The notes under the pieces were generated by a model, which saw nothing but the letters and a program-made list of their open reading frames with translations, did not search any database and was not told the origin of the DNA. The position numbers were made by a program, and so were the translations under genes. Shown one piece after another: positions 39,479 through 53,803 of a stretch of 64,000 nucleotides of DNA. Positions within the stretch are counted from its first letter, which is position 1; each line of letters begins with the position of its first letter. Location: positions 248,001 through 312,000 of the IMG/VR virus record IMGVR_UViG_3300042923_000569; one strand, written 5' to 3'.

Positions 39479-39725
39479 CCTGCATATCTTGCAAGCGTTT
39501 CATGATTTCATCAATGAAAATCATAGCTTGTTCTTCTGATAGATTATCAGGAATTTCTAAAATCAGTTCACCTGACTCTTTCCCACTTTCAATCATATCA
39601 CGTAAACAATTATTAATCTGTTCTGCGAAATCTTCTGCGGATAGTTCAATTTTTGGTACTTCATTCATGTATGCAAAATGCATAAAATTAGTAGTCATAT
39701 AACTCTCAATAATGCTGGAATCCAT
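39462..39725 (-). CDS. hypothetical acidic protein
   Basis: ORF; start probably MTTNF. Confidence 0.65.
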   Translation of the reverse strand: MDSSIIESYMTTNFMHFAYMNEVPKIELSAEDFAEQINNCLRDMIESGKESGELILEIPDNLSEEQAMIFIDEIMKRLQDMQDDSDE

Positions 39726-39777
39726 TTTGAAGTTTTCAATTAACAGTTGAGTTCATTATGGTTGCTGATAGATTCCA
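39716..39777 (-). ncRNA. GAAUC/CAGCAA-module RNA A (minimal, Asn GUU anticodon-loop mimic)
   Basis: TGGAATC-TA-TCAGCAACCA...TCAA-CTGTTAA-TTGA...GATTCCA. Confidence 0.7.
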
Positions 39778-39783
39778 ATTTTT

Positions 39784-40113
39784 TTATTTAAGCTTAATGG
39801 AGGACGCAATTTCTTCCATTAGTTCTGCTGTAAATTCAATTCCGAACACTTCACTATATCGTTTAGAAGTACGCTCTAACCAATTAGTACTTTTCGTTGT
39901 GAAACCGTATTGTACGTTCTTAGCTGCGTTGTTGTAAGAGTTCCAAGGCTCGTTAGACGATGCATTTAAACGACCCCAATCAGTAATAGCAATGAAGCCT
40001 AGTGCTGATTCTTTACCCCGAAGAATGTTATAGACAATATGGTCTTCTGCGGTGTGTTCTTTCTTACTTTTCCAGGTTTTGATTACGGTGATGTATTGTT
40101 CTTTATTTAACAT
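39784..40113 (-). CDS. conserved phage hypothetical protein
   Basis: HIVYNILRGK motif; own AAGGA SD; preceded in frame by an amber-interrupted leader. Confidence 0.8.
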   Translation of the reverse strand: MLNKEQYITVIKTWKSKKEHTAEDHIVYNILRGKESALGFIAITDWGRLNASSNEPWNSYNNAAKNVQYGFTTKSTNWLERTSKRYSEVFGIEFTAELMEEIASSIKLK

Positions 40114-40194
40114 GATATGTTCCTTTAGATAATTTAATTTAGTTTGTTCTGAATTAAGTTTATCTGGAGGACCAGTACTAAATTTCTATAGCAT
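40114..40194 (-). promoter_or_regulatory. Met-Leu-amber leader, in frame with downstream CDS
   Basis: AAAGGT SD, ATG CTA TAG then KFSTGPPDKLNSEQTKLNYLKEHI-M with no other stop. Confidence 0.5.
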
Positions 40195-40222
40195 AATATT
40201 ACCTTTGTGCTTGTTTAATTTG

Positions 40223-40305
40223 AGCGGAATACAGGATTCGAACCTGCGTAAACTATTCGCCTCTTGCTTGGAAGGCAAGTGCTCTACCAACTGAGCTAAT
40301 CCCGC
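40223..40305 (-). tRNA. tRNA-Gly(UCC) with long variable region
   Basis: CTTGC-CTTCCAA-GCAAG; U73; 15-nt variable region AGGCGAATAGTTTAC. Confidence 0.88.
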
Positions 40306-40444
40306 TAGGATGTACTGCCGCTCTCAGTACTGTACATACTTAATCTTTACGATTTGACCTGTACAGGTGCAACGCGGTTCCCGTCATATAATTTTACAAG
40401 CTGGGGGAATCATACAAGCTTGTTTCACAAGGAAATGAAATCTT

Positions 40445-40693
40445 TTAAATTAAGGTTTCTGAAACTTCTACATTACTTACACTGTAGTAACGATCATACT
40501 CTGAAGTTTTCTTTTCATAATGTGCAATGAACTTACGCTCTGCATGATCTTCATCAAGAGCATAAACAATGTGCGACTTATTATAAGTTCTTGGTTCATC
40601 AACCATATAATCGCTAATTACCACTTTACCCGTTACAAAGTATGCAAGCATATCTCGTACTGGTGTTGTGTTACCATATTCTTCTTCGATCAT
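40445..40693 (-). CDS. hypothetical protein
   Basis: ORF with AAGG SD. Confidence 0.7.
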   Translation of the reverse strand: MIEEEYGNTTPVRDMLAYFVTGKVVISDYMVDEPRTYNKSHIVYALDEDHAERKFIAHYEKKTSEYDRYYSVSNVEVSETLI

Positions 40694-40714
40694 AATTTAC
40701 CTTATTTTATTTTG

Positions 40715-40788
40715 CAGGAGATGGTGGATTCGAACCACCGATACCGATTTCAAAGACCGGTGCATTAGGCCATCTATGCTAATCTCCT
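40715..40788 (-). tRNA. tRNA-Gln(UUG)
   Basis: CCGGT-CTTTGAA-ATCGG; G73. Confidence 0.92.
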
Positions 40789-40793
40789 AAGAC

Positions 40794-40847
40794 TAGAATC
40801 TATTGTTTTTCATATATCCAATGATGTTTGATTGCTGTTAGATTCTA
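40794..40847 (-). ncRNA. GAAUC/CAGCAA-module RNA B (minimal)
   Basis: TAGAATC-TA-ACAGCAATCA...TCAT-TGGATAT-ATGA...GATTCTA; near-identical to 41113-41166. Confidence 0.7.
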
Positions 40848-40852
40848 AATTT

Positions 40853-41083
40853 TTATTCTACTTCATGTTCCCAAACTAGTACTGCTTGCTCTAATATAGT
40901 AGTATCACCATAATAGGTTTCAAGAGTATAAGGGTACGTTTTCTGGTGCCATATTGTCTTTTGTGGGTCAGTCCATATATGTTTTAACATATCAGATACC
41001 ACAAAAATGTTATCACCGTCTACACCGATATAATCATCTTCACGACCTTCTCGTTGTAGTAAATACATTTTAATTTTTTTCAT
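40853..41083 (-). CDS. hypothetical protein
   Basis: ORF lying between RNA B and RNA C repeats. Confidence 0.7.
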   Translation of the reverse strand: MKKIKMYLLQREGREDDYIGVDGDNIFVVSDMLKHIWTDPQKTIWHQKTYPYTLETYYGDTTILEQAVLVWEHEVE

Positions 41084-41112
41084 TTAACGTCACCGTTTAT
41101 CTAAATTAAAAC

Positions 41113-41166
41113 TAGAATCCATCTTTTTTCATATATCCAATGATGTTTGATTGCTGTTAGATTCTA
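41113..41166 (-). ncRNA. GAAUC/CAGCAA-module RNA C (minimal)
   Basis: Direct repeat of RNA B. Confidence 0.7.
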
Positions 41167-41298
41167 AAAGAGAAAGTTTCAAATTGAGTTTACAGAAAGA
41201 TTTTCAAGATCTTAATACGTATTCTATTCCAACCTTATAGGATAACATGCTATCCGTATTGCACCATAGTACGCCTGGTGAATTTGAAACAAATTTTG

Positions 41299-41371
41299 CG
41301 ATCACGGCTGGATTTGAACCAGCGACCACTCGCTTAACAGGCGAACGCTCTAACCACTGAGCTACGTAACC
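41299..41371 (-). tRNA. tRNA-Asn(GUU)
   Basis: TTCGC-CTGTTAA-GCGAG; G73. Confidence 0.93.
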
Positions 41372-41390
41372 ATTTGTATTTCTTACTTAT

Positions 41391-41420
41391 ATTATACCAC
41401 AAAATTTTGCGGCGTTTCAT
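41391..41420 (-). promoter_or_regulatory. WTGAAAC-type phage promoter
   Basis: ATGAAACG...TGTGGTATAAT upstream of tRNA-Asn. Confidence 0.78.
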
Positions 41421-41424
41421 TTAT

Positions 41425-41602
41425 TTCAGTACTAATATCAATTTAATAATAAGGCCATATCGGTCGTTGCGACAATTTATATAACCCCTGCGTGTACTTT
41501 CGGAGTAATTAATTCCTATCCTTAACGATGTTATTTGCCTGCTGATAAATTATTCTAGAAGTAATTTAACGCACTTATTATTAAATTATTATTAGTACTG
41601 AA
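41425..41602. repeat. 178-nt element closed by a ~28-bp inverted repeat (rod-like ncRNA candidate)
   Basis: TTCAGTACTAATA-TC-AATTTAATAATAAG ... CTTATTATTAAATT-AT-TATTAGTACTGAA. Confidence 0.7.
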
Positions 41603-41709
41603 TTGTTGGGAGCCGCAGCGTAACTCCCGTCAGATGATAAGCCATCTGCTACCCATCGTACATAGTCTATAGCTTATTGAATCAGTGTACGTAAGCTCTT
41701 GTAGTGTTT

Positions 41710-42159
41710 TTAACAGCCAAAAAGTCCATAACCCATGCTCATATTCAAATCGCCCCAAAATCCGTTAAAGTCTGGAACTTCGTCATTAACGATTGAATAT
41801 TCAAAATCCAATTCAGTTTGTGCAATTCGCATTAATAAGTCAACAAAATAACTTGGGTCTTCGATAATATAATTAGGTTCTTCATCAGTACCGTCATTAA
41901 ACACCAAGTCACTAAATTTAACACCAGCATCAGCTAGATTCTGAGCATGTTCATTATTAAGTTGACTGTCTTCGTAATCATCAGCAATCAGAAATCGAGG
42001 ATGGTTACCTCCACTGATAATACCAATCTTAGTACCAGCAATCTTGAATGATTCTTGAACTTTTTCATTAGGTTCAGTACTTTCAACAATGAAGACTTCA
42101 TACTGATTGTGTCCATCTTTAGACCAATCACCAATATTAACTTTGAAACGATAACTCAT
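41710..42159 (-). CDS. conserved phage hypothetical protein
   Basis: IGDWSKDGH N-terminus and GYGLF C-terminus. Confidence 0.8.
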   Translation of the reverse strand: MSYRFKVNIGDWSKDGHNQYEVFIVESTEPNEKVQESFKIAGTKIGIISGGNHPRFLIADDYEDSQLNNEHAQNLADAGVKFSDLVFNDGTDEEPNYIIEDPSYFVDLLMRIAQTELDFEYSIVNDEVPDFNGFWGDLNMSMGYGLFGC

Positions 42160-42170
42160 GATTTTACCTT

Positions 42171-42761
42171 TTATTGACCAAACTTGGTCATAGCTTCTTC
42201 TAGTGTATATGAATTTACAACTTTAATAGATGCAACATTGTATATTATTACGAATACTTCACCATTATTAAACTTGTACGTATAAGCATCATACCCAAGT
42301 TGTGTTAATGCACGAACAAATTGCGTCGGATGACTGTTATACCAATCATACCATACTGACATAAGTGCATCATACATACTATCTTCACTCATATAATTAT
42401 CGAGTGCAGTACGAATAGCACGATTTTTGTCTTCGTCCCAATTTGTATATGCTTCATCATCAGGAGTATTCTGTATTAATTTTAGCAGTACTGCCTTGTT
42501 AATTTTCTGACTTTTTGATAGTTCTTTTCTTATTGTCAATTCACATTCATAAATCATACCCGTAGGGGATTTTTCACAATACCCACGTGCAGTAATTGGA
42601 TTAGATGTGAAATATATACCTGGCCCGTATTCATCGTTACCTCTACCAACGAATTCATCGCTGAATTGTGAAATTGGATTTTGTGTACCATGATAATAGT
42701 AACCGGATAGTTTACCTTCCATGATAGAAGATATATCTTCCATCAATTTTTTCATTTGCAT
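42171..42761 (-). CDS. putative ADP-ribosyltransferase-fold protein
   Basis: YYHGT...YGPGIYFTSN...ARGY...LGYDAY...E.FVIIYN (H-Y-E type ART pattern). Confidence 0.65.
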   Translation of the reverse strand: MQMKKLMEDISSIMEGKLSGYYYHGTQNPISQFSDEFVGRGNDEYGPGIYFTSNPITARGYCEKSPTGMIYECELTIRKELSKSQKINKAVLLKLIQNTPDDEAYTNWDEDKNRAIRTALDNYMSEDSMYDALMSVWYDWYNSHPTQFVRALTQLGYDAYTYKFNNGEVFVIIYNVASIKVVNSYTLEEAMTKFGQ

Positions 42762-42790
42762 AATTATGTCCCTAAGAGTTTTATTTTTAT

Positions 42791-43144
42791 TTACTTCTTA
42801 AAGAATAACCATCCAAATGCTCGTACACCAGCATACATCAGTACTGCACGAGGTTTACCAACGTTGGTATCTCTTAATGCTTGCATAAGAACTGCGTCAG
42901 CCTCTTTGCGGCTTAGATTCCCATAGTGGTATAGCCAATCATGTAGGGTTGCTGCGGAATGACCACGATCCCCAACCAGCTCAAATACTACCGGAATACG
43001 AGGAACACTTGCAAAATCTGTTTCAAACCCTGCTGGTACAATAATAGTACCGTGCTTCTTATCCTCGTAAATTAAATCAGATAGTAAACGCCACTTCTTA
43101 CCTTCGTTGTTAATTAACTCTACTTTTAAATGTGTAATGAACAT
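42791..43144 (-). CDS. DUF1353 family protein
   Basis: IIVPAGFETDFASVPR...AATLHDWLY...RKEAD...MYAGVRAFG. Confidence 0.9.
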   Translation of the reverse strand: MFITHLKVELINNEGKKWRLLSDLIYEDKKHGTIIVPAGFETDFASVPRIPVVFELVGDRGHSAATLHDWLYHYGNLSRKEADAVLMQALRDTNVGKPRAVLMYAGVRAFGWLFFKK

Positions 43145-43206
43145 ATTCCATCCTTGATTATAGTTAGTACTATAATATTTAAGAATAGATGTTCATTTTT
43201 AGGTAA

Positions 43207-43434
43207 TTATACCTTTTCGATAATAACAGTACTAGTACGTTTAACTACTGAAAAATTTTCAAGATACTGTTTACTGCGATTTAGAAATATATATGCATCG
43301 TCTTCAGTTTCAAACTCCATAGCACCGAAAAGTACTGGAAGTGTTATTACTGAATTTTGAAAACCAATGCTACTGAAAAACTCTTCAGTTTCGTTATCTT
43401 GTAACATATACGCAGTATTTGTATGAGTATACAT
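43207..43434 (-). CDS. hypothetical protein
   Basis: ORF with AAGGA SD. Confidence 0.7.
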   Translation of the reverse strand: MYTHTNTAYMLQDNETEEFFSSIGFQNSVITLPVLFGAMEFETEDDAYIFLNRSKQYLENFSVVKRTSTVIIEKV

Positions 43435-43459
43435 GCAATATTTCCTTTATTATAATTGC

Positions 43460-43580
43460 TGGAATTCATTTAATTTTTGACCGCTGCGTCTACCGATTTC
43501 GCCACTTGCACCGAAGTGCAAGGCAGGACTCGAACCTGCAAAAAGCTGTTTGCTATTAGTGTGTTTGCTGCTGAATTCCA
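43460..43580 (-). ncRNA. GAAUC/CAGCAA-module RNA D (circularly permuted tRNA mimic)
   Basis: TGGAATTC-A-GCAGCAAACA...T-arm GCAGG-TTCGAGT-CCTGC, acceptor CTTGCAC-TTCG-GTGCAAG, D-arm TGGCGAAATCGGTAGACGC...GAATTCCA. Confidence 0.85.
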
Positions 43581-43590
43581 AATTTATTAT

Positions 43591-43667
43591 TGGTGGGAAT
43601 AACTGGACTCGAACCAGTGACCTCTCCCTTATCAGGGGAGTGCTCTAACCAACTGAGCTATATTCCC
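43591..43667 (-). tRNA. tRNA-Ile(GAU)
   Basis: CTCCC-CTGATAA-GGGAG; CCA encoded. Confidence 0.95.
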
Positions 43668-43675
43668 GTACTACT

Positions 43676-44134
43676 TTACATATTATACCGTCTGTTTAAC
43701 CAATTATCATCGATACGAGTACGGCGTTCTCTTTCCGCGAATTCATCATCCAATTTCTTCACTGCTTCACAGATGCTGTCAATTTGCTCTTGAGTAGGTT
43801 CCCAAGTTTTTATGAACTCATATAGATCATTAACTGTCATTTTACCGTCAGTAAGAGGGTCTTTCACTTCAGTACTGTCAGGTTCTTCTACATGAGATTT
43901 AATGATTGGTTTAGCTTCTTCCTGCCAACCACGAGGCATCCAGTTGTCGTCTTCTAATTCACAAGACATTAGCTCTGTTGGATTCATTGTAGTATCACCA
44001 TAGAAAACATGATACAATTCACCATTCTTGTTCAGATAAAGACGTTCATTGGATCTGAACTTTGGAAGTTCAAATAAAATACCGTCTTCACCTGAATCTT
44101 GGAGTAGTTTTTTGATTTCGTTAAAAGTCATCAC
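43676..44134 (-). CDS. hypothetical protein
   Basis: ORF. Confidence 0.75.
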   Translation of the reverse strand: MMTFNEIKKLLQDSGEDGILFELPKFRSNERLYLNKNGELYHVFYGDTTMNPTELMSCELEDDNWMPRGWQEEAKPIIKSHVEEPDSTEVKDPLTDGKMTVNDLYEFIKTWEPTQEQIDSICEAVKKLDDEFAERERRTRIDDNWLNRRYNM

Positions 44135-44344
44135 TTACCACGCGAATTTATTCATAGAATCTAGTACTTCATTAAGTACTTCAAGTTTTGGGTCATTGTC
44201 TTCAATATCAAACAATGCATAAGCAAGTTCACCATAAAGAACAACGTTTTGGTCATAAGTTTGCTTTTCAACAATTTGTTTAGTGCAAACTGCAATATCA
44301 GTACTTTCAAGAATTTGCTTTACAATATTTTCCATGACATTCAC
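44135..44344 (-). CDS. hypothetical protein
   Basis: ORF. Confidence 0.65.
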   Translation of the reverse strand: MNVMENIVKQILESTDIAVCTKQIVEKQTYDQNVVLYGELAYALFDIEDNDPKLEVLNEVLDSMNKFAW

Positions 44345-44424
44345 CTAATTTTGGACATAAAAAATGGACTACACCATATGTTAAGAAACACAAGGAATAA
44401 TCCATAATCATGACTAGTTCAGTA

Positions 44425-44649
44425 TTAGAACGAATCTGGTTTAGCTACTGATCGTACTGCCGACATAAAACCTTTTTGCAGGTCAGTCCTAGCAATAGAA
44501 AGCCAACGTTGATCAATTTCTGGATTATCTTGTAGGGAATCAATAAGATCACCAACTTGGCTAGCCAAGTTTTTAATATTATTCATCGCATCAATCTCAG
44601 CCTGAGATAAATCGCGATACCCTTTAATGTGTTTGTGTTGATTATCCAT
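44425..44649 (-). CDS. acb2: anti-CBASS cyclic-nucleotide sponge Acb2
   Basis: [20 protein letters not shown]...[27 protein letters not shown] matches the Acb2 N- and C-terminal signatures as recalled. Confidence 0.9.
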
Positions 44650-44672
44650 AATCGTTATCTCTTAATTAAAAC

Positions 44673-44731
44673 TGGAATCCACATAGTCAAAGTAAAAGTT
44701 TGAGTTTTTGTGTGGTTGCTGGGGGATTCCA
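44673..44731 (-). ncRNA. GAAUC/CAGCAA-module RNA E (minimal, Lys UUU anticodon-loop mimic)
   Basis: TGGAATC-CC-CCAGCAACCA...TCAAA-CTTTTAC-TTTGA...GATTCCA. Confidence 0.72.
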
Positions 44732-44738
44732 AAACTTG

Positions 44739-44966
44739 TTATTCTACGTAGCCTAAGTAACCTACATGTACCTTTTCAGTACTCTTAGTTTTCTTGCCCG
44801 TTTCTTTATCTTCTGTGCTTACTTCACGCTCAAATACAATTGGCTCAAGTAAGACTACTTTCTTTTCTGCACCGAATACACTACTAATTTCATCATTAGA
44901 AAGTTTATCAGTACTAGTATGACGGCGTAGTGTACCATCAACTTTGTAATAATAATCGTAATACAT
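44739..44966 (-). CDS. hypothetical protein
   Basis: ORF with AAGGA SD. Confidence 0.7.
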   Translation of the reverse strand: MYYDYYYKVDGTLRRHTSTDKLSNDEISSVFGAEKKVVLLEPIVFEREVSTEDKETGKKTKSTEKVHVGYLGYVE

Positions 44967-45026
44967 AGTTATTTCCTTTTGTACTTTCTTCTATGATATT
45001 ATTTATCAATATATTCGTGCTAAATT

Positions 45027-45237: not shown

Positions 45238-45395
45238 GAATTCTATAGTAATCGAACATACTACCTTTAACACGGTTCAATATGACTTATTTATATATCC
45301 CAAGTCACCAAGTGATTACGAAGGGAGTTTTACGTCCGAGTAACCAATCCATTATTGTATGATTTTAGATTGTTTTATGTTTGCAGTGAGAATTC
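45238..45395 (-). ncRNA. GAAUC/CAGCAA-module RNA F (divergent, longer cargo)
   Basis: GAATTC-TC-ACTGCAAACA...GAATTC closing ~145 nt with internal hairpins. Confidence 0.55.
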
Positions 45396-45423: not shown

Positions 45424-45527
45424 AAGAATCGGGTTTTTCTGTGCCTCGTAACCAACGATGAAAGGGAATTGAACCCTAAGCGGTTTTCGCCAAATGAAAT
45501 AAGATTTATGGTTGCTGTGCGATTCTT
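45424..45527 (-). ncRNA. GAAUC/CAGCAA-module RNA G (permuted, Gln UUG-like loop)
   Basis: AAGAATC-GC-ACAGCAACCA...TTTC-ATTTGGC-GAAA, T-arm AGGG-TTCAATT-CCCT, D-like TCGT-TGGTT-ACGA...GATTCTT. Confidence 0.75.
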
Positions 45528-45974: not shown

Positions 45975-46092
45975 GAAATCTTTTCTATACGGTCATCCAG
46001 ACACAGCCTAAAAAGCAACATGGCTGCTGGGGGATCGAACCCCACCGTTTTTCATAGCAGGAAAAAAGTTTTTATGTTTGCTGTAAGATTTC
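45975..46092 (-). ncRNA. GAAUC/CAGCAA-module RNA H (permuted tRNA mimic, Ser GCU loop)
   Basis: GAAATC-TT-ACAGCAAACA...TTTTTC-CTGCTAT-GAAAAA, T-arm TGGGG-TTCGATC-CCCA, acceptor hairpin GCAGCC/GGCTGT, D-arm GTC-TGGAT-GAC...GATTTC. Confidence 0.8.
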
Positions 46093-46105
46093 GATATTGC
46101 TTCGT

Positions 46106-46212
46106 GCAGCGACAAGGATTTGAACCTACGTGATATTAAGAGAAACCTTCTCTACTTAATTCATTACCAGTGATCGATTTACTAATGAATCGCGTCAATC
46201 ACCATCCCGCTA
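46106..46212 (-). ncRNA. tRNA-like RNA with enlarged anticodon and variable arms
   Basis: Acceptor TAGCGG/TCGCTG, T-loop AGG-TTCAAAT-CCT, arms TTCATTA/TAATGAA and AGAGAA/TTCTCT. Confidence 0.5.
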
Positions 46213-46223
46213 AACTTACTTAT

Positions 46224-46253
46224 ATTATACCACAATTTTTTCTACCGTTTCAT
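46224..46253 (-). promoter_or_regulatory. WTGAAAC-type phage promoter
   Basis: ATGAAACG...TGTGGTATAAT at the head of the 45.0-46.2 kb RNA cluster. Confidence 0.78.
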
Positions 46254-48155: not shown

Positions 48156-48632
48156 TTAATCTTGAAGTAAACCGTAATCATAGATGATTAGTTCATCATC
48201 TTTGATTCCGATATTATGACTCTCTACGTCATAAAGGATATTCGAAATATCTTCACGTGTCAAGCCACTTTTTAAAATCTTTTTTGCAAATTCTCTGAAG
48301 TGAGGATGAATAGAATTTAAGTACTTTTCATCTTCAGTCGCAGAATACAAGCGATGCATCATTTCGTCCAACTCATCCAGATCATAATCATTAGGATGGT
48401 CAGTAATACTAATCACTCGTTCCATCACTATACGCGTTTCTGAACTCATGTCAACAAAAATCTTACACAGAGGAAGTTTATCGCCATATTCCTTGAAAGT
48501 GGTTAGCTCGTTATGACACTGCTTAACACCCCAGGAATCTATGAAATCCATATTCTGTGCAATCTTGATTACCATATCATCATTGATTGCATATACTATA
48601 CGTGTAGATCCAGAAGCAATATAATTGAACAT
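48156..48632 (-). CDS. protein kinase-like fold protein
   Basis: IASGSTRIVY, VIKIA, NE, YDVESHNIG (catalytic loop), IYDYG. Confidence 0.75.
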   Translation of the reverse strand: MFNYIASGSTRIVYAINDDMVIKIAQNMDFIDSWGVKQCHNELTTFKEYGDKLPLCKIFVDMSSETRIVMERVISITDHPNDYDLDELDEMMHRLYSATEDEKYLNSIHPHFREFAKKILKSGLTREDISNILYDVESHNIGIKDDELIIYDYGLLQD

Positions 48633-48652
48633 TATATCCCTTAATTTTCATC

Positions 48653-48688
48653 ATCTTAATTAAAATTTGAGGGGCTGTCAAGCCCCTC
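48653..48688 (-). promoter_or_regulatory. fused terminator-like hairpin / sigma70-type promoter
   Basis: GAGGGGCT-TGAC-AGCCCCTC hairpin containing TTGACA; TTGACA-17-TAAGAT. Confidence 0.7.
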
Positions 48689-48700
48689 GTGGTATTTATT

Positions 48701-50062
48701 TTACCACTCTACACCGACACCAGCACCCCAAAGTACTTCGGACTGTGTGTTGGTACTGACCGTCACTTTCGTGGTTACAGCTTGGTTTACACGAGAACTG
48801 AAGCCTACTGCCACAGCCTGTTCACCATCATAACCACCTACGCCTGCACCCAGCATGAAATTACCATCGCGGGTTACCTGGGGAATGTTCGCCATAGCAC
48901 CGGCACCGGCAATACCTGCACTTGCAAGTTTACGGTTATCGCCCATACGTTTATCAATATCAGAGAAACGTTTGTTATTTTTGTAATCGCTGTTGTTCAT
49001 GCGATCTTCAACTTTACCAATACGCTGAGTGTTACTGGTGATACGTTCGTCATGATCAACCAGAGTACTGTCATTGTTATCGATACGTTTACTTAACACA
49101 GCATCAGCACTTTTACGCGACGATGTTTCAGCAGTTACTGAGCGTTGTACAGAAGATACCGCAGCGGTACGTTCAGTACTTTCATCGTTGATCTGTTGTG
49201 CCAATGCTTTATCTGCGTTACCACGAGTAGTGGATTCAGACTGTAATGCATTATCCTGACGTTGTTGATCTTTCAGGAAGGTATTATTATCTACCTTAGT
49301 ACTGATAACAACGTTTTGCTGGTCATCCGTAATACGCTGTTCAGCTTTGTTTTTGTCGATATTGCTTTGCAGCATTTTATCGCCAGAAACACGCTCGGAT
49401 TTTTCAACAATAAGTGCATTACTATTGTCCTGTCCCAGCCGAACACCAATATCAGCAGTGTTTTGTGCATTGATCGCATTGTTGTTGGCATTCTGACCAA
49501 TTTCAATTGCAGTCTGTGCATTATTACCTGCGTTGATTGCATTGTTATTTGCATTATGTGCCAGGTCTTTTGCTTCTTCAACACCGGCTTGTGCAGTGAT
49601 TGCCTTGTTATCGGCTGCCTGACCAATTTCAATTGCAGTTTGTGCATTGGTCATTGCATTGTTAGCGGTGTTTTGTGCATCGCTGGCTTTATTAAAAGCG
49701 TTATGACCGATGTTTTTTGCTTCTTCAACACCTGTCTGACGTTCACTGATTTCTTTCTGAAGTGCATTGTCCTGACGTTGTTGATCAACCTGGAAAACGC
49801 TCTTATCAAGTTTATCTTTTTGGAGGTTTGAAACTTGATATTCTAAATTCTTCCCGGCGGCTTCATTGTACTTAGTTTGAATTTCTTTCCACTGAGTTTG
49901 TTCTTCTTTCCATGCACGATCTTTCTCAGCGAGAAGGTTCGCATCTTGTACTTTATCGTAAGCAGTGGGAGTTTTTACACAACCACAACTTGGATCAATT
50001 GAAGTAGCATGTGCAGAAACTGAACATGCAACAATCGCCATTGCAATCAATGTCTTTTTCAT
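48701..50062 (-). CDS. YadA-family trimeric autotransporter adhesin
   Basis: Signal peptide MKKTLIAMAIVACSVSAHA (start reassigned), coiled-coil stalk with repeats, anchor GIAGAGAMANIPQ...GAGVGGYDGEQAVAVG...GAGVGVEW. Confidence 0.9.
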   Translation of the reverse strand: MKKTLIAMAIVACSVSAHATSIDPSCGCVKTPTAYDKVQDANLLAEKDRAWKEEQTQWKEIQTKYNEAAGKNLEYQVSNLQKDKLDKSVFQVDQQRQDNALQKEISERQTGVEEAKNIGHNAFNKASDAQNTANNAMTNAQTAIEIGQAADNKAITAQAGVEEAKDLAHNANNNAINAGNNAQTAIEIGQNANNNAINAQNTADIGVRLGQDNSNALIVEKSERVSGDKMLQSNIDKNKAEQRITDDQQNVVISTKVDNNTFLKDQQRQDNALQSESTTRGNADKALAQQINDESTERTAAVSSVQRSVTAETSSRKSADAVLSKRIDNNDSTLVDHDERITSNTQRIGKVEDRMNNSDYKNNKRFSDIDKRMGDNRKLASAGIAGAGAMANIPQVTRDGNFMLGAGVGGYDGEQAVAVGFSSRVNQAVTTKVTVSTNTQSEVLWGAGVGVEW

Positions 50063-50189
50063 TTTTATTACCCTGGTGTGCCGCCACATTTGGCGTGAGG
50101 TAATAATACCGTGTCGAAACATTTCGGTCAACACATTTTTTAATATAATTCAAAGAAAACTTAACCCAAATTTACATTAAAAAAGATAT

Positions 50190-50277
50190 TGGTGGGAATA
50201 GTCGGACTCGAACCGACACGCCATCTCTGGCGGGGGATTTTGAATCCCCTGCGTGCTACCAATTTCGCCATATTCCC
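50190..50277 (-). tRNA. tRNA-Leu(CAA)
   Basis: GGGGA-TTCAAAA-TCCCC; long variable arm; CCA encoded. Confidence 0.95.
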
Positions 50278-50311
50278 AGATAAGCCCTTCAGATGAAGGG
50301 CTAAGAAGTAC

Positions 50312-50671
50312 TTATACTGACTTGTAAGAAATTACATGAATCCGATCACTAGCAATTGGAATACCAGTGTGGTCAGTAATATACTCAGCAAGAGTTAGGA
50401 GTACTTTATTACTATCTACTGTATATAAATGTAATTTAGCCGTGAATGTTTCACCTGGATTAGTGTAGAATTCATAAACTACTTCTACATTACTGTTCTT
50501 TTGTCCAGTGGCAGATGCATAAATCTGGTCTGGTGTTTGGTGTACTTTCTTAATAGGAACAGCCCAAGCAATTAGACAGAACATACCAGCAAAGATACCT
50601 ACTGCCATGTTGCCAAGAGAAAATGCTACAATTGCAACTGCAAGAAAGAATACTTCAAAAAAATGTTTCAT
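50312..50671 (-). CDS. hypothetical membrane protein
   Basis: Two N-terminal TM segments. Confidence 0.75.
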   Translation of the reverse strand: MKHFFEVFFLAVAIVAFSLGNMAVGIFAGMFCLIAWAVPIKKVHQTPDQIYASATGQKNSNVEVVYEFYTNPGETFTAKLHLYTVDSNKVLLTLAEYITDHTGIPIASDRIHVISYKSV

Positions 50672-50680
50672 TGTTAATCC

Positions 50681-51115
50681 TTAAAATCCAGTTACTTTGA
50701 ATTCACGACTTTCTTCGTCGAAGTATAGTACTTCACCAATAGAAGCTGATGCCGCTGATGAATGGTCAGTTGTTGCATCACTTTCACCTTCTACCGATAC
50801 ACGGATACCATCGATAACAAAGGTCATATTATAACCATTAACTACTAGTTCATTTTCAACAGTAGTTTCAGAGTTTGATTCTTCATCATCATTTTCGTCT
50901 TCATCCCAATGATCATCCCAATCATCGTTCTCACTTATACGCCAGATGTTTGCTCGAAGGAAAGAAAGAATTTCTTCAATGCTTTCTGATTTTTCAGGTA
51001 CAATTTTTACATTAAAGTGTTTATAAGTATATGCATCTGCATCTCCGTGCATAAACTTTAATGCAATTACAAGAACGTTTTTCTTTGGTTCTACAGGAAT
51101 TAGTTTAATAGACAA
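50681..51115 (-). CDS. hypothetical protein
   Basis: FMHGDADAYT motif, acidic loop; likely TTG start at 51115 (track ORF extends to 51235). Confidence 0.7.
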   Translation of the reverse strand: MSIKLIPVEPKKNVLVIALKFMHGDADAYTYKHFNVKIVPEKSESIEEILSFLRANIWRISENDDWDDHWDEDENDDEESNSETTVENELVVNGYNMTFVIDGIRVSVEGESDATTDHSSAASASIGEVLYFDEESREFKVTGF

Positions 51116-51125
51116 TTTGTAACCC

Positions 51126-51374
51126 TTATTCTTCAGTTTGTTCTGGCATATTATGGTATTTGAAATTACCATGTTTATCTTTTGCCGTGTAACGATCATA
51201 AGTTCCTGGATAGGATGACTTAATTGATTGTTCACGTGCGACCGCAGGGTTAATAAAAGTTACATCAGTTTTAATGTAATCTTTAAATTCTTTTTTCTTT
51301 TGTTCAAAAAGAACAGCAGTACTTTCAATGAAGTTATAAAACTTCATAGTAAGGTTTAATAGGTAATTAAACAT
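51126..51374 (-). CDS. hypothetical protein
   Basis: Start reassigned to MFNYL (GAGG SD). Confidence 0.65.
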   Translation of the reverse strand: MFNYLLNLTMKFYNFIESTAVLFEQKKKEFKDYIKTDVTFINPAVAREQSIKSSYPGTYDRYTAKDKHGNFKYHNMPEQTEE

Positions 51375-51389
51375 ATAATCCTCTGTAAT

Positions 51390-51513
51390 TGGCGGCGAGT
51401 ACTGGATTCGAACCAGTGACCAGGACATTAAAAGTGTATGAGTTATGGTTGCTGCGGGAATCCAATCAGGATTCCTTGGGTTCTACCTGCTCTACCAACT
51501 GAGCTAACTCGCC
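51390..51513 (-). ncRNA. tRNA-Lys(UUU) interrupted by a 48-nt GAAUC/CAGCAA module (RNA I)
   Basis: Removing 51438-51485 gives a 76-nt cloverleaf with GGACA-CTTTTAA-TGTCC and CCA. Confidence 0.88.
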
Positions 51514-51520
51514 TATATTT

Positions 51521-51877
51521 TTAACGAATAAGTACTAAAGTATTATTTTTAGCCAGCTCATTCACATCATAATTATCAAGTAGTTGATCAAGTGATTCAA
51601 CTAAGATAATTGGATTTTCGGTACTTTCGCTTACATCAACCAAGCTTTCTTTAATTTCCAAGAAATCTTGTACATATGGTTCACTGATAACACTATTATA
51701 CTCAGATGCATAATAAGTTACAGTTTTGTTGACACGCAAATTAAGTAATGTTCCTACAAAATCATGAATATCATTTGGTTTACCAATTAAAGTAAACTTC
51801 ATACCAAGATCTTTTTTAGAACAAATATCAGATGCAATATCTTGATATGCATGTTCTGCCATTTTAATATTTAACAT
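51521..51877 (-). CDS. hypothetical protein
   Basis: ORF with AAGGA SD. Confidence 0.7.
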   Translation of the reverse strand: MLNIKMAEHAYQDIASDICSKKDLGMKFTLIGKPNDIHDFVGTLLNLRVNKTVTYYASEYNSVISEPYVQDFLEIKESLVDVSESTENPIILVESLDQLLDNYDVNELAKNNTLVLIR

Positions 51878-51885
51878 TGTTATCC

Positions 51886-52245
51886 TTAGCTACGATTAGG
51901 TCGTGAATTTTTAATTAACTCAATGCCTGCATCAGTACATTTTTTAATATTCTGTTCGTACAGATTATCAACAACATCGGTATCTGAACTGTGAAGATAA
52001 ATCTGTTTCAGATTAGGAAACAGACCCCGCTTAAAGCGATATGTCATCATCGTTAGAATCTGACCACCAGTACGCCCACCTGAACCAGACAAGAAATTAT
52101 CCAAATGAACAACTTCGATTTCTGAAGCATTATCAAAGATAAAATTCTTTGCTTCCCACCACTCTTTCAACCAAACAATACCGTCTGATTGTTCAGCACT
52201 AAGGTGATTAGCTGGATTCCGAATATCATCTACATAGACTTTCAT
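51886..52245 (-). CDS. cyclic-phosphate-processing receiver-like domain protein
   Basis: MKVYVDDIRNP...W...EVVHLDNFL...TG...IYLHSS. Confidence 0.7.
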   Translation of the reverse strand: MKVYVDDIRNPANHLSAEQSDGIVWLKEWWEAKNFIFDNASEIEVVHLDNFLSGSGGRTGGQILTMMTYRFKRGLFPNLKQIYLHSSDTDVVDNLYEQNIKKCTDAGIELIKNSRPNRS

Positions 52246-52607
52246 TCGTGATTCTCCAGGCTATTAGCAATCAGTTCGATTCCAACTGCTTTTAGTAATT
52301 CAAAACAATTATCGAACATCATGTTAACCAAATCAGCATCAGATGAATGAAGATAAATCTGCTTGAGCTTAGGCCAAGTACTACCATCTCCCCACATCCA
52401 ATCACCAGCAACCATATAAAACAGATCCTGACCAGTAAGTTCAGGTTCATCCATATAGTTATCGAAATGGATCACTTCGATTTCAGCGGCATTTGCAATC
52501 AGGAAACTTCTTGATTCCCACCATTCTTTCAGCCAAACAATACCTTCTGACTGTTCAGGGGTAAGATGATTAACCGGATTGCGAATATCATCAATAAAGA
52601 CTTTCAT
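52242..52607 (-). CDS. cyclic-phosphate-processing receiver-like domain protein (tandem paralog)
   Basis: MKVFIDDIRNP...EVIHFDNYM...TG...IYLHSS. Confidence 0.7.
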   Translation of the reverse strand: MKVFIDDIRNPVNHLTPEQSEGIVWLKEWWESRSFLIANAAEIEVIHFDNYMDEPELTGQDLFYMVAGDWMWGDGSTWPKLKQIYLHSSDADLVNMMFDNCFELLKAVGIELIANSLENHE

Positions 52608-52846
52608 TGACTTTCCTTAATAACTTTTTGAAATGCTCGTATCTGCCTAATAATAACACAAACCGAATCATATTCATCAATTGCTCCGGTATTAACCAGT
52701 ACTTCAATTGAATCAAGAAGTTTTTCATCTTCTTCATTGATGTTGATTGATTTACTTAGTTTATTAAGTATCAATAACGAACGATGAACAAAATGTAAAT
52801 TATTCGAGCCAGGTTCACTGAAGATAGTTAGAAGATTATTGTCCAT
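52604..52846 (-). CDS. hypothetical protein
   Basis: ORF. Confidence 0.65.
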   Translation of the reverse strand: MDNNLLTIFSEPGSNNLHFVHRSLLILNKLSKSININEEDEKLLDSIEVLVNTGAIDEYDSVCVIIRQIRAFQKVIKESQ

Positions 52847-53171
52847 TTACCACCAGATGATGACCATGACTACGAGCAATAAACTGATCGACACTACAAC
52901 CCATTTCTTTACCAATAGTGGCAGTAGTGAAATCTGCTGAACCTACTTCACGGAACGTTTGTGTATCGAATGTATTATCAACATTCAATTCATAAACACA
53001 GTTCTCTTTTAATTCGATGCTGCCATTAGCTGGATGGTCTTTTGGTACAATATGACCAATTACAATACCACCTGGCATTACATGGAGCCGCATGACCATT
53101 GAGTTCATAAAATTAAATCCAGTGCATTTATTCAAGATATGAATGTTATCAAATACGTCAATCAAAGTCAA
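52836..53171 (-). CDS. hypothetical protein
   Basis: ORF, TTG start. Confidence 0.65.
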   Translation of the reverse strand: MTLIDVFDNIHILNKCTGFNFMNSMVMRLHVMPGGIVIGHIVPKDHPANGSIELKENCVYELNVDNTFDTQTFREVGSADFTTATIGKEMGCSVDQFIARSHGHHLVVNGQ

Positions 53172-53178
53172 GTACTTT

Positions 53179-53472
53179 TTATGAAAAATTTTCGTGATGC
53201 TTATAATTTAACGATGAATAGCACGATAGATCATACGCAATAAAATCATAAAATTTTGGTACATGTTCTTGTAGTTTACGCATCACTTTGAAATCAGCAC
53301 GTGCTTCTTCAGGTGTGTAAACTTTTAGACCGCAATGAAAGTACTCGTCATGTTCGGACTTCCACTTTTCAATTGCCATTTCATCAGTCATCAGATGATC
53401 ATCAGTGTAGATAATCTCGGTTGTCCATCCTTCGCCAGTAGCAGCGTACTCATAGAATAAGAAACTTTTCAC
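53179..53472 (-). CDS. hypothetical protein
   Basis: YAATGEG motif. Confidence 0.7.
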   Translation of the reverse strand: MKSFLFYEYAATGEGWTTEIIYTDDHLMTDEMAIEKWKSEHDEYFHCGLKVYTPEEARADFKVMRKLQEHVPKFYDFIAYDLSCYSSLNYKHHENFS

Positions 53473-53678
53473 TTATTAACCTCACTTATGTTTCTGATAA
53501 TATTTTCACATCGCCCAAGTTTCTTTTTCAGCTTATTATGTTCCTTCAACAAATCATTGTATGTCTGAAGTTTAACAAATTCACCTTTTTTAGATTCCTG
53601 CATTTCTGCGTCATAAGAATATTCATCATCCCATAAATCAAAACTACGTTTTACTACTGGATTATATTTCTTTACCAT
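53469..53678 (-). CDS. hypothetical protein
   Basis: MQES..GEFVK..Y phage motif. Confidence 0.7.
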   Translation of the reverse strand: MVKKYNPVVKRSFDLWDDEYSYDAEMQESKKGEFVKLQTYNDLLKEHNKLKKKLGRCENIIRNISEVNK

Positions 53679-53692
53679 GATATTACCATTTG

Positions 53693-53803
53693 TGCAAGGT
53701 GCAGGATTCGAACCTGCGTTACGTTCTTGAAATGAAAGTTATGTATGCCGTAAGATTCCATCTGGAATCGCTTTTCGTGTCCTAACCACTAGACGAACCT
53801 TGC
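53693..53803 (-). ncRNA. tRNA-Glu(UUC) interrupted by a 39-nt GAAUC/CGGCAU module (RNA J)
   Basis: Removing 53737-53775 gives a cloverleaf with CGTTC-ATTTCAA-GAACG and a Glu-type D-arm TCGTCTAGTGGTTAGGAC. Confidence 0.85.

What the first reader, a model, noticed from the sequence alone, without database searches (positions are those of the whole stretch)
39716..53803. A family of ten tRNA-mimic RNAs built on one conserved GAAUC-N2-NCAGCAAHCA module that displays different anticodon loops
Seen: ten minus-strand non-coding elements (39716, 40794, 41113, 43460, 44673, 45238, 45424, 45975, 51390, 53693) share a 6-7 bp GGAAUC/GAUUCC-type stem followed by NCAGCAA(A/C/U)CA (variants ACUGCAAACA, ACGGCAUACA). 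About 17-23 nt after CAGC most carry a 7-nt anticodon-type stem-loop: Asn GUU (A), Lys UUU (E, I), Gln UUG (G), Ser GCU (H), Glu UUC (J), and a weak GAU loop (B, C). One topology occurs in three forms: a full tRNA with the module inserted in the anticodon stem, a circular permutation opened at the module and closed at the acceptor end, and a minimal anticodon-only RNA. Established: bacterial YrlA Y RNAs have a terminal Ro60-binding stem plus permuted T-, acceptor- and D-arms, and anti-phage anticodon nucleases (PrrC, RloC, PARIS AriB, colicin E5-type) cut Lys/Glu/Gln/Asn loops. Inference: the module is a docking site for one phage protein (a Ro60/TROVE-like or RNA-repair factor, not encoded in this window), and the RNAs form a library of anticodon decoys or sensors. 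The motif differs from the YrlA consensus as I recall it, and YrlA lacks an anticodon loop, so this may be an undescribed family.
Basis: partly seen in the sequence, partly recalled or inferred. Interest (0 to 1): 0.95.

Follow-up and report, generated by a model that had tools for sequence, protein, structure and literature searches.

The report
Handle-tagged tRNA-mimic RNAs in jumbo phages
A giant phage's tRNA region encodes ten structured small RNAs, unannotated in related GenBank phages, that share one conserved stem-plus-CAGCAA "handle" attached to different pieces of tRNA; the family is conserved across a whole clade of jumbo phages and probably serves the phage-host fight over tRNAs.

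Summary

**The module:** a 7-11 bp helix (P1, mostly GAAUC/GAUUC), followed within 0-1 nt by NCAGCAA (variants CGGCAU, CUGCAA). An A-rich strand enters P1 from the other side.

**The cargo varies:**
- anticodon-type hairpins (A, E, and weakly B, C)
- permuted T-arm / closed-acceptor / D-arm bodies (D, G, H)
- a three-hairpin body that is not tRNA-like (F)
- whole tRNA-Lys and tRNA-Glu paralogs carrying the module between nt 28 and 29 (I, J)

**Conservation:** the same orthologous types occur at 12-16 copies per locus in GAP32, CBB, Serratia BF, Yersinia fHe-Yen9-04, XbC2 and metagenomic relatives. Fewer occur in Salmonella phage Munch. Copies sit on the transcribed strand with one exception, with compensatory changes in P1 and in the cargo helices. 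GenBank records do not annotate them, and Rfam has no matching family.

**Not Ro60-type Y RNAs:** the CGAA motif is absent, and related phages show no TROVE gene.

**Context:** an early island with Acb2, two cRec genes and an ADP-ribosyltransferase.

**Best reading (inferred):** stable trans-acting RNAs whose common handle docks one unknown factor, while the cargo mimics tRNA parts. Decoy or adaptor roles are untested.

The parts
39715..39778 (-). Element A: minimal form. P1 is UUGGAAUC/GAUUCCAG, the module is UCAGCAACCA, and the hairpin is UCAA-CUGUUAA-UUGA (Asn GUU loop).
   Evidence: Sequence; fold; nhmmer hit; orthologs in 7 relatives.
40794..40847 (-). Element B: minimal form. P1 is UAGAAUCUA/UAGAUUCUA, the module is ACAGCAAUCA, and the hairpin is UCAU-UGGAUAU-AUGA. 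It ends a few nt upstream of tRNA-Gln.
   Evidence: The same type sits 4 nt upstream of a tRNA in Munch and in L017.
41112..41167 (-). Element C: a near-duplicate of B.
43460..43580 (-). Element D: permuted, YrlA-like. Order: P1 UGGAAUUC, module GCAGCAAACA, T arm GCAGG-UUCGAGU-CCUGC, a 7-bp acceptor stem closed by UUCG, a D arm, a 3-bp split anticodon stem, an A-rich strand, then P1.
   Evidence: The Rfam YrlA local alignment scores 25.7 bits over model positions 24-84.
44673..44731 (-). Element E: minimal form. P1 is UGGAAUCC/GGAUUCCA, the module is CCAGCAACCA, and the hairpin is UCAAA-CUUUUAC-UUUGA (Lys UUU loop). It lies directly upstream of the Acb2-like ORF.
   Evidence: The XbC2 block including the flanking ORFs is 79% identical.
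45238..45395 (-). Element F: 158 nt. P1 is GAAUUCU/AGAAUUC, the module variant is ACUGCAAACA, and three covarying hairpins follow that are not tRNA-like. It lies upstream of tRNA-Ser.
   Evidence: The alignment of 8 orthologs, including Salmonella phage Munch, is; pair counts are.
45424..45527 (-). Element G: permuted. P1 is AAGAAUCG/CGAUUCUU, the module is ACAGCAACCA, the hairpin is UUC-AUUUGGC-GAA, and the T arm is AGGG-UUCAAUU-CCCU.
   Evidence: P1 covaries to AGGAUUCG/CGAAUCCU in L004 and L007.
45975..46092 (-). Element H: permuted. P1 is GAAAUCUU/AAGAUUUC, the module is ACAGCAAACA, the hairpin is UUC-CUGCUAU-GAA, and the T arm is UGGGG-UUCGAUC-CCCCA. The acceptor-like stem is GCAGCC/GGCUGU; its loop holds GUUGCU, which is complementary to AGCAAC of the module.
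   Evidence: The acceptor stem covaries across orthologs as GCAGCC/GGCUGU, ACAUCC/GGAUGU and ACAACC/GGUUGU.
51390..51513 (-). Element I: a tRNA-Lys(UUU) paralog. Between nt 28 and 29 of the anticodon stem it carries a hairpin-closed handle (GGAAUCC-UGAU-UGGAUUCC at 51475-51457, then GCAGCAACCA at 51455-51446). It has an encoded CCA end.
   Evidence: Rfam tRNA scores 47 bits, with 63 nt in place of the anticodon arm. In XbC2 the hairpin is replaced by AAAUUACAG/CUGUAAUUU.
53693..53803 (-). Element J: a tRNA-Glu(UUC) paralog. Its handle is GAUUCC-AGAU-GGAAUC (53769-53754) followed by the module variant ACGGCAUACA, again between nt 28 and 29.
   Evidence: Rfam tRNA scores 43.1 bits. All J orthologs keep ACGGCAU.
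46224..46253 (-). Promoter (TGAAACG, 17-18 nt spacer, TGnTATAAT) that drives the unit containing H, the tRNAs, G, F and E. A second copy lies at 41391-41420.
   Evidence: In XbC2 two such promoters each sit directly in front of a handle RNA with no ORF between them. The motif is described for CBB and GAP32 in PMC5259590.

Best explanation
These are genes for a lineage-specific family of small structured RNAs, here called handle RNAs. They are transcribed early, together with the phage tRNAs.

**Anatomy.** Each RNA joins two parts.
- A constant handle: helix P1, the invariant single-stranded (N)CAGCAA immediately 3' of P1's 5' strand, and an A-rich strand entering P1 from the other side.
- A variable cargo that copies part or all of a tRNA: an anticodon stem-loop, a T / acceptor / D elbow, or a whole tRNA. 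In type F the cargo is a different fold.

**Shown.**
- The family, its structure and its covariation.
- Its strand specificity.
- Its conservation as orthologous types across a jumbo-phage clade.
- Dedicated promoters in front of some copies.
- The whole-tRNA versions are extra paralogs beside canonical tRNA-Lys and tRNA-Glu.

**Inferred.**
- P1 locks both ends of the RNA after it is excised from the polycistronic tRNA/mRNA transcript, which makes it stable.
- The CAGCAA loop is the docking site for one common partner, probably a protein of the phage or the host.
- The cargo engages tRNA-binding proteins such as anticodon nucleases, aminoacyl-tRNA synthetases or modification enzymes.
- The RNAs would therefore act in trans as decoys, sponges or adaptors in the tRNA-centred arms race, in the way a Y RNA couples a constant protein-binding stem to a variable effector module.
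For: **Copy number and strand.**
- There are exactly ten copies in the window, all on the minus strand.
- The eight close relatives (GAP32 = L003, Serratia BF = L004, CBB = L006, fHe-Yen9-04 = L007, XbC2 = L001, plus L002, L005 and L067) carry 12-16 copies each. All but one of their 115 hits are on the transcribed strand.
- Copies also occur in Munch and L017.
- A stringent B-type pattern hits cellular genomes only at about the chance rate: 45 single hits in 596 Gb, against about 34 expected. In IMG/VR its hits fall almost only in contigs of 350-380 kb.

**Structure.**
- P1 covaries: UGGAAUCC/GGAUUCCA, UAGAAUCU/AGAUUCUA, AGGAUUCG/CGAAUCCU, GGAUUUAU/AUAAAUCC, and the hairpin form AAAUUACAG/CUGUAAUUU.
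- CAGCAA starts 0-1 nt after P1 in 80 of 81 copies, and a 7-nt A-rich run precedes the 3' strand of P1.
- The cargo helices also covary.

**Gene-like behaviour.**
- Rfam scores I and J as tRNA and matches D locally to YrlA.
- In XbC2, standalone promoters sit directly in front of two handle RNAs.
- Canonical tRNA-Lys(UUU) and tRNA-Glu(UUC) coexist with I and J in the window and in XbC2.

**Context.** Neighbouring ORFs are Acb2/Tad1 (downstream of E), two cRec cyclic-phosphate-processing domains (upstream of I) and ART-PolyVal. cRec is linked to RNA ligases in PMC7824862.
Against: - There are no expression data, no mapped RNA ends and no identified partner.
- About half of the cargos (B, C, F, G; D lacks a loop) are not convincing anticodon mimics, so a pure anticodon-decoy library does not fit.
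- The stems of the anticodon-like hairpins differ from those of the phage tRNAs, and from E. coli tRNAs as I recall them. The one nuclease whose determinants I read about, AriB, depends on stem bases (PMC12409363).
- Most elements fill short gaps between ORFs, and B-type copies abut tRNAs. A purely cis role in processing or stability is therefore not excluded.
- The invariance of CAGCAA could reflect RNA-RNA pairing rather than protein binding. The H-type loop GUUGCU is complementary to it.
Confidence: 0.4

Rival explanations
1. The elements act in cis as punctuation. P1 plus its AU-rich flanks would be processing and stability signals, for example RNase E cuts in the U-rich flanks with P1 blocking exonucleases. 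They would separate and stabilise the mRNAs and tRNAs of the long early transcripts. The released RNAs would have no trans function.
For: - The elements fill almost the whole gap between a stop codon and the next ribosome-binding site.
- B-type copies lie 4 nt upstream of tRNAs in three distant phages.
- Other copies start right after a tRNA 3' end.
- UU(U) is conserved 3-5 nt after P1, and A/U-rich sequence precedes it.
Against: - This does not explain the invariant CAGCAA.
- It does not explain anticodon-loop sequences kept identical to tRNA loops across hosts.
- It does not explain the T / acceptor / D bodies.
- It does not explain the handle sitting inside complete tRNA paralogs.
- It does not explain dedicated promoters driving a handle RNA with no ORF.
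Confidence: 0.22
2. They are interrupted or circularly permuted tRNA genes. The handle would be an intron-like element that is cut out, with the nick in the anticodon stem sealed by a phage RNA ligase. Permuted forms would be circularised and then opened at the acceptor loop, yielding functional tRNAs.
For: - Removing the insert from I and J restores canonical 5-bp anticodon stems with Lys and Glu loops.
- D-type copies have a split anticodon stem (nt 27-31 with 39-43) and a 7-nt loop-like segment.
- Related phages encode RnlA plus a second RNA ligase, a Thg1-like enzyme and a tRNA nucleotidyltransferase (PMC5259590, PMC11273794).
Against: - The minimal forms (A, B, C, E) and F contain no tRNA body.
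- The acceptor stems of the permuted forms are closed by short loops with no CCA (UUCG in D).
- By inspection there is no bulge-helix-bulge motif at the junctions.
- Canonical tRNA-Lys(UUU) and tRNA-Glu(UUC) are present as well.
- The D-type 'anticodons' differ between orthologs: AGC, AUC, UCA.
Confidence: 0.1
3. They are true Y RNAs. The handle would bind a Ro60/Rsr ring, from the host or from an undetected phage homolog, to form RYPER-like complexes.
For: - The architecture matches Y RNAs: a terminal 5'/3' stem flanking a large loop with a conserved motif on the 5' strand, and a tRNA-like module in D, G and H (PMC4201824; PMC12135203).
Against: - The CGAA (GNCGAA) motif is replaced by CAGCAA, CGGCAU or CUGCAA.
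- The YrlA score is 25.7 bits against a gathering threshold of 69, and covers only the tRNA-like part.
- No TROVE ORF appears among the window ORFs scanned in Pfam.
- tblastn with the phiLo Ro60 reaches TROVE genes at 23-28% identity in 92 phages. It finds none in the Cronobacter, Erwinia, Pectobacterium, Serratia, Yersinia or Salmonella phage groups that hold the family.
- Ten to sixteen copies per genome is unlike Y RNA loci.
Confidence: 0.07
4. They are sibling regulatory sRNAs. The conserved single-stranded ACAGCAA would be a shared seed that pairs with UUGCUGU-containing targets, in host or phage mRNAs or in the H-type loop.
For: - The motif is invariant, single-stranded and lies near the 5' end.
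- There are many paralogs sharing one motif.
- The H-type acceptor loop keeps the complementary GUUGCU in all eight orthologs.
Against: - The seed is only 6-7 nt long.
- The complement is not notably enriched on the sense strand: GUUGCU occurs 15 times against 11.6 expected, and UUGCUG 21 times against 11.6.
- The model does not explain the tRNA-like cargo.
- There is no covariation to test the pairing.
Confidence: 0.08

Closest known systems
YrlA / bacterial and phage Y RNAs (Rfam RF02553; PMC4201824; phiLo Yrl1/2 in PMC12135203)
   Same: - A terminal helix is formed by the 5' and 3' ends.
- A large internal loop carries a short conserved motif on its 5' strand.
- The inner module is a circularly closed tRNA mimic: T arm, closed acceptor stem, D arm and a split anticodon stem.
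- D aligns locally to the YrlA model.
- The logic is modular: a constant stem plus a variable effector module.
   Different: - The motif is CAGCAA rather than (GN)CGAA.
- No Ro60/TROVE gene is nearby or in related phages.
- There are 10-16 paralogs per genome instead of 1-2.
- The cargo includes bare anticodon hairpins, complete tRNAs and a non-tRNA fold, none of which Y RNAs have.
- The score lies far below the Rfam threshold.
Stable RNAs of unknown function in the T4 tRNA cluster (rnaC/species 1 and rnaD/species 2)
   Same: They are small stable RNAs encoded inside a phage tRNA gene cluster and co-transcribed with the tRNAs. rnaC carries a T-arm-like hairpin. The Rak2/GAP32 group is distantly related to T4 (PMC5259590).
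   Different: The handle profile finds nothing in the T4 region. T4 has no P1/CAGCAA module and no paralog family.
Phage tRNAs that neutralise tRNA-cleaving defences (T5 tRNA-Lys/Thr/Asn against PARIS AriB; PMC11464382, PMC12409363)
   Same: They are phage-encoded tRNA-Lys and tRNA-Asn related RNAs in an early region, and the context is counter-defence.
   Different: Those are ordinary, decoding-competent tRNAs with point changes in the anticodon stem. Here the anticodon stem is interrupted by a roughly 50-nt handle, or only the hairpin is present, so replacement in translation is unlikely.
RNA mimics used as decoys or operators: the pseudo-ToxI antitoxin mimic, RNA anti-CRISPRs, and the thrS operator that mimics the tRNA-Thr anticodon arm
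   Same: They follow the same principle: an RNA copies the part of a cellular RNA that a protein recognises.
   Different: None of them share sequence or architecture with this family. The comparison is an analogy only.

Membership tests
YrlA / Y RNA | A terminal 5'/3' stem enclosing a large internal loop. | tested here: met
   P1 is 7-11 bp and 99.2% paired with covariation.
YrlA / Y RNA | A conserved Ro60-binding motif, GNCGAA(N)G or CGAA, on the 5' strand of the loop. | tested here: not met
   All 81 closed-stem copies used for the consensus, and the I, J and F types, have CAGCAA, CGGCAU or CUGCAA. None has CGAA at that place. The motif definition comes from PMC4201824 and PMC12135203.
YrlA / Y RNA | A tRNA-like T / acceptor / D module. 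| tested here: inconclusive
   It is met by D (local YrlA alignment) and by reading for G and H. It is absent from A, B, C, E and F.
YrlA / Y RNA | Reaches the Rfam gathering score (69 bits). | tested here: not met
   The best hit is 25.7 bits, for D only.
YrlA / Y RNA | Encoded next to a Ro60/TROVE gene. | tested here: not met
   No TROVE ORF appears among the 42 window ORFs scanned in Pfam, including the largest. tblastn with the phiLo Ro60 gives no hits in the phage groups that carry the family. A host-encoded Rsr was not examined.
YrlA / Y RNA | Binds Ro60/Rsr. | not testable with these tools
   This needs a gel-shift assay or co-immunoprecipitation.
tRNA (RF00005) | A cloverleaf scoring above the gathering threshold. 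| tested here: inconclusive
   I scores 47 bits and J 43 bits, both above the threshold of 29. The other eight elements do not score as tRNA, and ARAGORN calls none of the ten.
tRNA (RF00005) | A continuous 5-bp anticodon stem with a 7-nt loop. | tested here: not met
   In I and J, 63 and 52 nt replace 15 and 13 model positions. Reading the sequence places the insert between nt 28 and 29.
Intron-containing or permuted tRNA genes (archaeal/algal type) | A bulge-helix-bulge motif at the exon-intron junctions. | tested here: not met
   None was found on reading the junctions of I, J and D. This was inspection only, not a dedicated search.
Intron-containing or permuted tRNA genes (archaeal/algal type) | Removing the insert restores a complete tRNA. 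| tested here: inconclusive
   This holds for I and J and partly for D. It is impossible for A, B, C, E and F.
Retron ncRNA | Terminal inverted repeats with an AGC branch site, plus an adjacent reverse transcriptase. | not tested
   A stem followed by AGC is present, but the minimal copies are only 54-64 nt. None of the 42 window ORFs scanned in Pfam matched a reverse transcriptase. Whole genomes of relatives were not scanned.

The most novel reading that the evidence does not exclude
The handle (P1 plus CAGCAA) is the binding platform of a previously unknown phage ribonucleoprotein system. It would display a genome-encoded library of tRNA parts (anticodon arms of Asn, Lys, Glu and others, tRNA elbows, whole tRNAs) to capture, inhibit or redirect host tRNA-directed enzymes such as anticodon nucleases. 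That would make it an RNA-based, multi-specific counter-defence, analogous in logic to Y RNPs but independent of Ro60.
Probability: 0.3. Interest if true: 0.9.

Novelty: new variant of a known kind. Interest (0 to 1): 0.8.

Why it matters
**Why it is surprising.** GAP32, CBB, Serratia BF, fHe-Yen9-04 and their relatives have been sequenced for years. Yet 10-16 conserved structured RNA genes per genome sit unannotated in their tRNA regions. Some are mis-called as odd tRNAs: in the XbC2 record one is annotated as 'tRNA-Phe(AAA)' and another as a 122-nt tRNA-Lys.

**What is new in the design.** A single handle joined to interchangeable tRNA fragments has not been described for phage RNAs, as far as my Rfam and literature searches reach.

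**What it could open up.**
- If the RNAs act on tRNA-targeting defences or on the translation apparatus, they would be a new class of RNA-based counter-defence.
- That would help explain why jumbo phages keep large tRNA islands.
- The handle could serve as a natural scaffold for displaying RNA modules.
- Even on the cis-processing reading, the family defines how these long early transcripts are punctuated.

Tried and rejected
- **Rfam.** The scan at gathering thresholds and again at E up to 10 gave only tRNA hits and one weak YrlA hit.
- **T4 stable RNAs rnaC and rnaD.** They have no module.
- **Ro60 partner.** Rejected as above.
- **Promoter or MotA-box reading of the DNA motif.** The spacing to any -10 element is wrong, and the motif also occurs inside tRNA paralogs.
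- **Intrinsic terminator.** P1 is AU-rich, its loop is 40-140 nt, and the scan does not call the elements as terminators.
- **Self-cleaving ribozymes, K-turn, GNRA loop, tmRNA-like tag.** No known core matches by inspection. Reading frames starting at the GCA are inconsistent. The H acceptor stem lacks G3.U70.
- **Mini-ORFs inside the elements.** AUG appears only when P1 happens to start with G.
- **MazF-type ACA sites.** Copies with GCAGCAACCA contain no ACA.
- **Pairing of the module with a loop in the same RNA.** Conserved only in the H type.
- **Sense-strand complements of the module.** Not informative.
- **Neighbouring small ORFs.** Most have no known family in PHROGs or Pfam.
- **Literature.** I found no description of the family.
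- **Cellular genomes.** Hits were at about the chance rate.
- **Supplement of the jumbo-phage survey.** Not held as text.

Full report
**What the window is.** The window is part of a jumbo phage. It is 100% identical in the tested gene to the 357,873-bp IMG/VR contig 3300042923_000569. It carries 26 tRNA genes by ARAGORN and 27 tRNA matches in Rfam at gathering scores, all on the minus strand. Its nearest GenBank relative is Xanthomonas phage XbC2, and the region is syntenic with GAP32, CBB, Serratia phage BF and Yersinia phage fHe-Yen9-04. The CBB paper describes this part of the genome as the early, host-takeover region with RpoD-like promoters (PMC5259590).

**The observation.**
- A profile built from the 26 nt around the module finds exactly ten hits in the window, all on the minus strand and none elsewhere.
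- The 9-mer TGDTTGCTG occurs 11 times against 1.6 expected.
- Each element has a helix P1 of 7-11 bp. The usual form is UUGGAAUC/GAUUCCAG or UUAGAAUCUA/UAGAUUCUAG.
- NCAGCAA follows the 5' strand of P1 after 0-1 unpaired nt in 80 of 81 copies collected from the window and eight relatives.
- A 7-nt A-rich run precedes the 3' strand of P1, and UU(U) follows it 3-5 nt downstream.

- *Minimal.* In A, B, C and E, P1 closes a loop that holds only the module and a short hairpin.
- *Permuted.* In D, G and H, P1 closes a permuted tRNA body: T arm, an acceptor-like stem closed by a loop, then a D-like arm. Rfam's YrlA model aligns to D's T / acceptor / D segment and to the 3-bp split anticodon stem (25.7 bits).
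- *Inserted.* I and J are complete tRNA-Lys(UUU)-like and tRNA-Glu(UUC)-like genes (47 and 43 bits). P1 is a hairpin there, and handle plus linkers sit between nt 28 and 29.
- *A fourth kind of cargo.* F (158 nt) has the handle plus three hairpins that are not tRNA-like.

**It is a conserved RNA family, not a local oddity.**
- Each of the eight close relatives (XbC2, GAP32, BF, CBB, fHe-Yen9-04 and three metagenomic relatives) carries 12-16 copies. Only one of their 115 hits lies on the non-transcribed strand.
- The types are orthologous. The Asn-loop type, the Lys-loop type, the B type, and the G, H, D, F, I and J types all recur at syntenic places.
- The more distant Salmonella phage Munch and contig L017 have 3-6 copies, including the F type next to tRNA-Ser and the B type 4 nt upstream of a tRNA.
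- GenBank records carry no annotation under the matches.
- A stringent B-type pattern hits cellular genomes at about the chance rate: 45 single hits against about 34 expected in 596 Gb. In IMG/VR it hits almost only 350-380 kb contigs.
- The T4 tRNA cluster, with its stable RNAs rnaC and rnaD, has no module.

**Structure is under selection.**
- P1 changes by compensation between types and between orthologs: G-C to A-U at the third pair, AAGAAUCG/CGAUUCUU to AGGAUUCG/CGAAUCCU, GAAUUCU to GGAUUUAU/AUAAAUCC, and the I-type hairpin GGAAUCC/GGAUUCC to AAAUUACAG/CUGUAAUUU.
- On 33 minimal copies P1 is 99.2% paired, against 50% or less for slid partners.
- On eight F orthologs, 32 pairs are 95.6% paired and 16 carry double changes; no shuffle out of 500 reaches this.
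- Cargo helices covary as well:
  - B hairpin: UCAU/AUGA against UUCU/AGAA.
  - G hairpin: UUC/GAA against UAC/GUA.
  - I anticodon stem: ACA/UGU against CCA/UGG.
  - H acceptor stem: GCAGCC/GGCUGU, ACAUCC/GGAUGU, ACAACC/GGUUGU.
- By contrast the core CAGCAA is invariant. Its type-specific variants are CGGCAU in all J orthologs, and CUGCAA in F of the window and of L002.

**They behave as genes.**
- In XbC2 two promoters of the TGAAACG...TGnTATAAT type each stand directly in front of a handle RNA, with no ORF in between.
- In the window the same promoter (46253-46224) precedes an unscored tRNA-like RNA and then H.
- The whole-tRNA versions are extra copies. Canonical tRNA-Lys(UUU) and tRNA-Glu(UUC) exist in the window. 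They also exist in XbC2, where ARAGORN finds a tRNA-Lys(UUU) that the record does not annotate.

**Comparison with Y RNAs.**
- The permuted members share the YrlA architecture: a terminal stem, a loop with a conserved 5'-strand motif, and a tRNA-like module.
- The defining Ro60 motif, GNCGAA or CGAA (PMC4201824, PMC12135203), is absent.
- The Rfam score is far below threshold.
- No TROVE ORF appears among the 42 window ORFs scanned in Pfam.
- I identified the phiLo Ro60 gene by its Pfam TROVE match and used it in tblastn.
  - The search reaches TROVE genes at 23-28% identity in 92 phages of many groups.
  - No genus with two or more records that carries the handle family appears among them.
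- I therefore do not file the family under Y RNA. It may still work like one.

**Context.**
- The ORF just downstream of E is an Acb2/Tad1-type cyclic-nucleotide sponge (PF24729, E 2e-20).
- Two tandem cRec domains lie just upstream of I. They are predicted cyclic-phosphate processing enzymes, linked to RNA ligases in PMC7824862.
- An ART-PolyVal ADP-ribosyltransferase lies between C and D.
- Most other neighbours have no known family.
- This is a counter-defence island, which fits a role in the conflict over tRNAs without proving it. AriB of PARIS cuts tRNA-Lys, tRNA-Thr and tRNA-Asn, and phage tRNAs rescue infection (PMC12409363).

**Mechanism.**
- *Shown:* a modular RNA family with a constant handle and variable, mostly tRNA-derived cargo. 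It is structurally constrained, strand-specific, clade-wide, partly self-promoted, and redundant with canonical tRNAs.
- *Inferred:*
  - P1 defines and protects the ends of RNAs cut out of the polycistronic transcripts.
  - CAGCAA, with the A-rich strand, is a docking site for one shared partner.
  - The cargo presents tRNA parts to tRNA-binding proteins, so the RNAs act as decoys, sponges or adaptors.
- *Confidence:* I put this at about 0.4.
- *Rivals:* cis-acting punctuation (0.22), spliced or permuted tRNA genes (0.10), seed-sharing sRNAs (0.08) and true Y RNAs (0.07).

**Verdict.** The family appears undescribed, and it is best classed as a new variant of the modular tRNA-mimic (Y-RNA-like) kind. 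Its function is open.

Noticed in passing
window 44425-44649 (-): This 74-aa ORF directly downstream of element E matches the Acb2/Tad1 hairpin domain (PF24729, E 2e-20), an anti-CBASS/anti-Thoeris nucleotide sponge. Homologs occur in about 80 viral contigs, most of them small phages that lack the RNA family.
   Followed up: partly
window 51886-52245 and 52242-52607 (-): Two tandem ORFs carry the cREC_REC domain (PF20274), a predicted cyclic-phosphate processing domain associated with RNA ligases. They lie just upstream of the handle-bearing tRNA-Lys paralog I.
   Followed up: partly
window 42171-42761 (-): An ORF with an ART-PolyVal ADP-ribosyltransferase domain (PF18760, E 7e-10) lies between elements C and D.
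   Followed up: no
window 46105-46220 (-): A tRNA-like RNA sits between the promoter and element H. It has a T arm (UAGG-UUCAAAU-CCUUG), a long extra arm and an 8-nt loop CAUUAGUA. Neither ARAGORN nor Rfam calls it, and its fold is no more stable than that of shuffled sequence (z = -0.5).
   Followed up: partly
window 60102-60173 (-): Rfam calls a tRNA here (50.6 bits), next to tRNA-Arg(CCG). ARAGORN does not call it.
   Followed up: no
L001 (XbC2) 29630-29703, 12265-12379, 19662-19783: The XbC2 GenBank record has annotation problems. ARAGORN finds a canonical tRNA-Lys(UUU) where the record shows a 'tRNA-Leu (AGG)' and a CDS. The handle-bearing tRNA-likes are annotated as tRNA-Phe(AAA) and as a 122-nt tRNA-Lys(TTT).
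   Followed up: yes
L001 (XbC2) 10962-11039: This tRNA-like gene has an anticodon arm that reads as a long stem capped by UUCG, with no obvious anticodon loop. ARAGORN and the record call it tRNA-Glu(TTC).
   Followed up: no
window 45994-46020 (-) and H-type orthologs: The loop closing the acceptor-like stem of H keeps GUUGCU in all eight orthologs. This is complementary to AGCAAC of the family's module and could form a pseudoknot or a kissing contact with other members. Because both sides are invariant, there is no covariation to test it.
   Followed up: partly
window 43540-43560 (-) and D-type orthologs (L001 22006-22120, L006 10967-11113): D-type RNAs have a split anticodon stem. The 7-nt loop-like segment beside it differs between orthologs: AUAGCAA, CUAUCAC and AUUCAAC, which correspond to the triplets AGC, AUC and UCA.
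   Followed up: no
window 48701-50134, 26200-27447, 13344-14348 (-): Three other ORFs have recognisable domains: a protein with a YadA-like membrane anchor (477 aa), a BCS1-type AAA ATPase (415 aa) and a sigma-70 family factor (334 aa).
   Followed up: no
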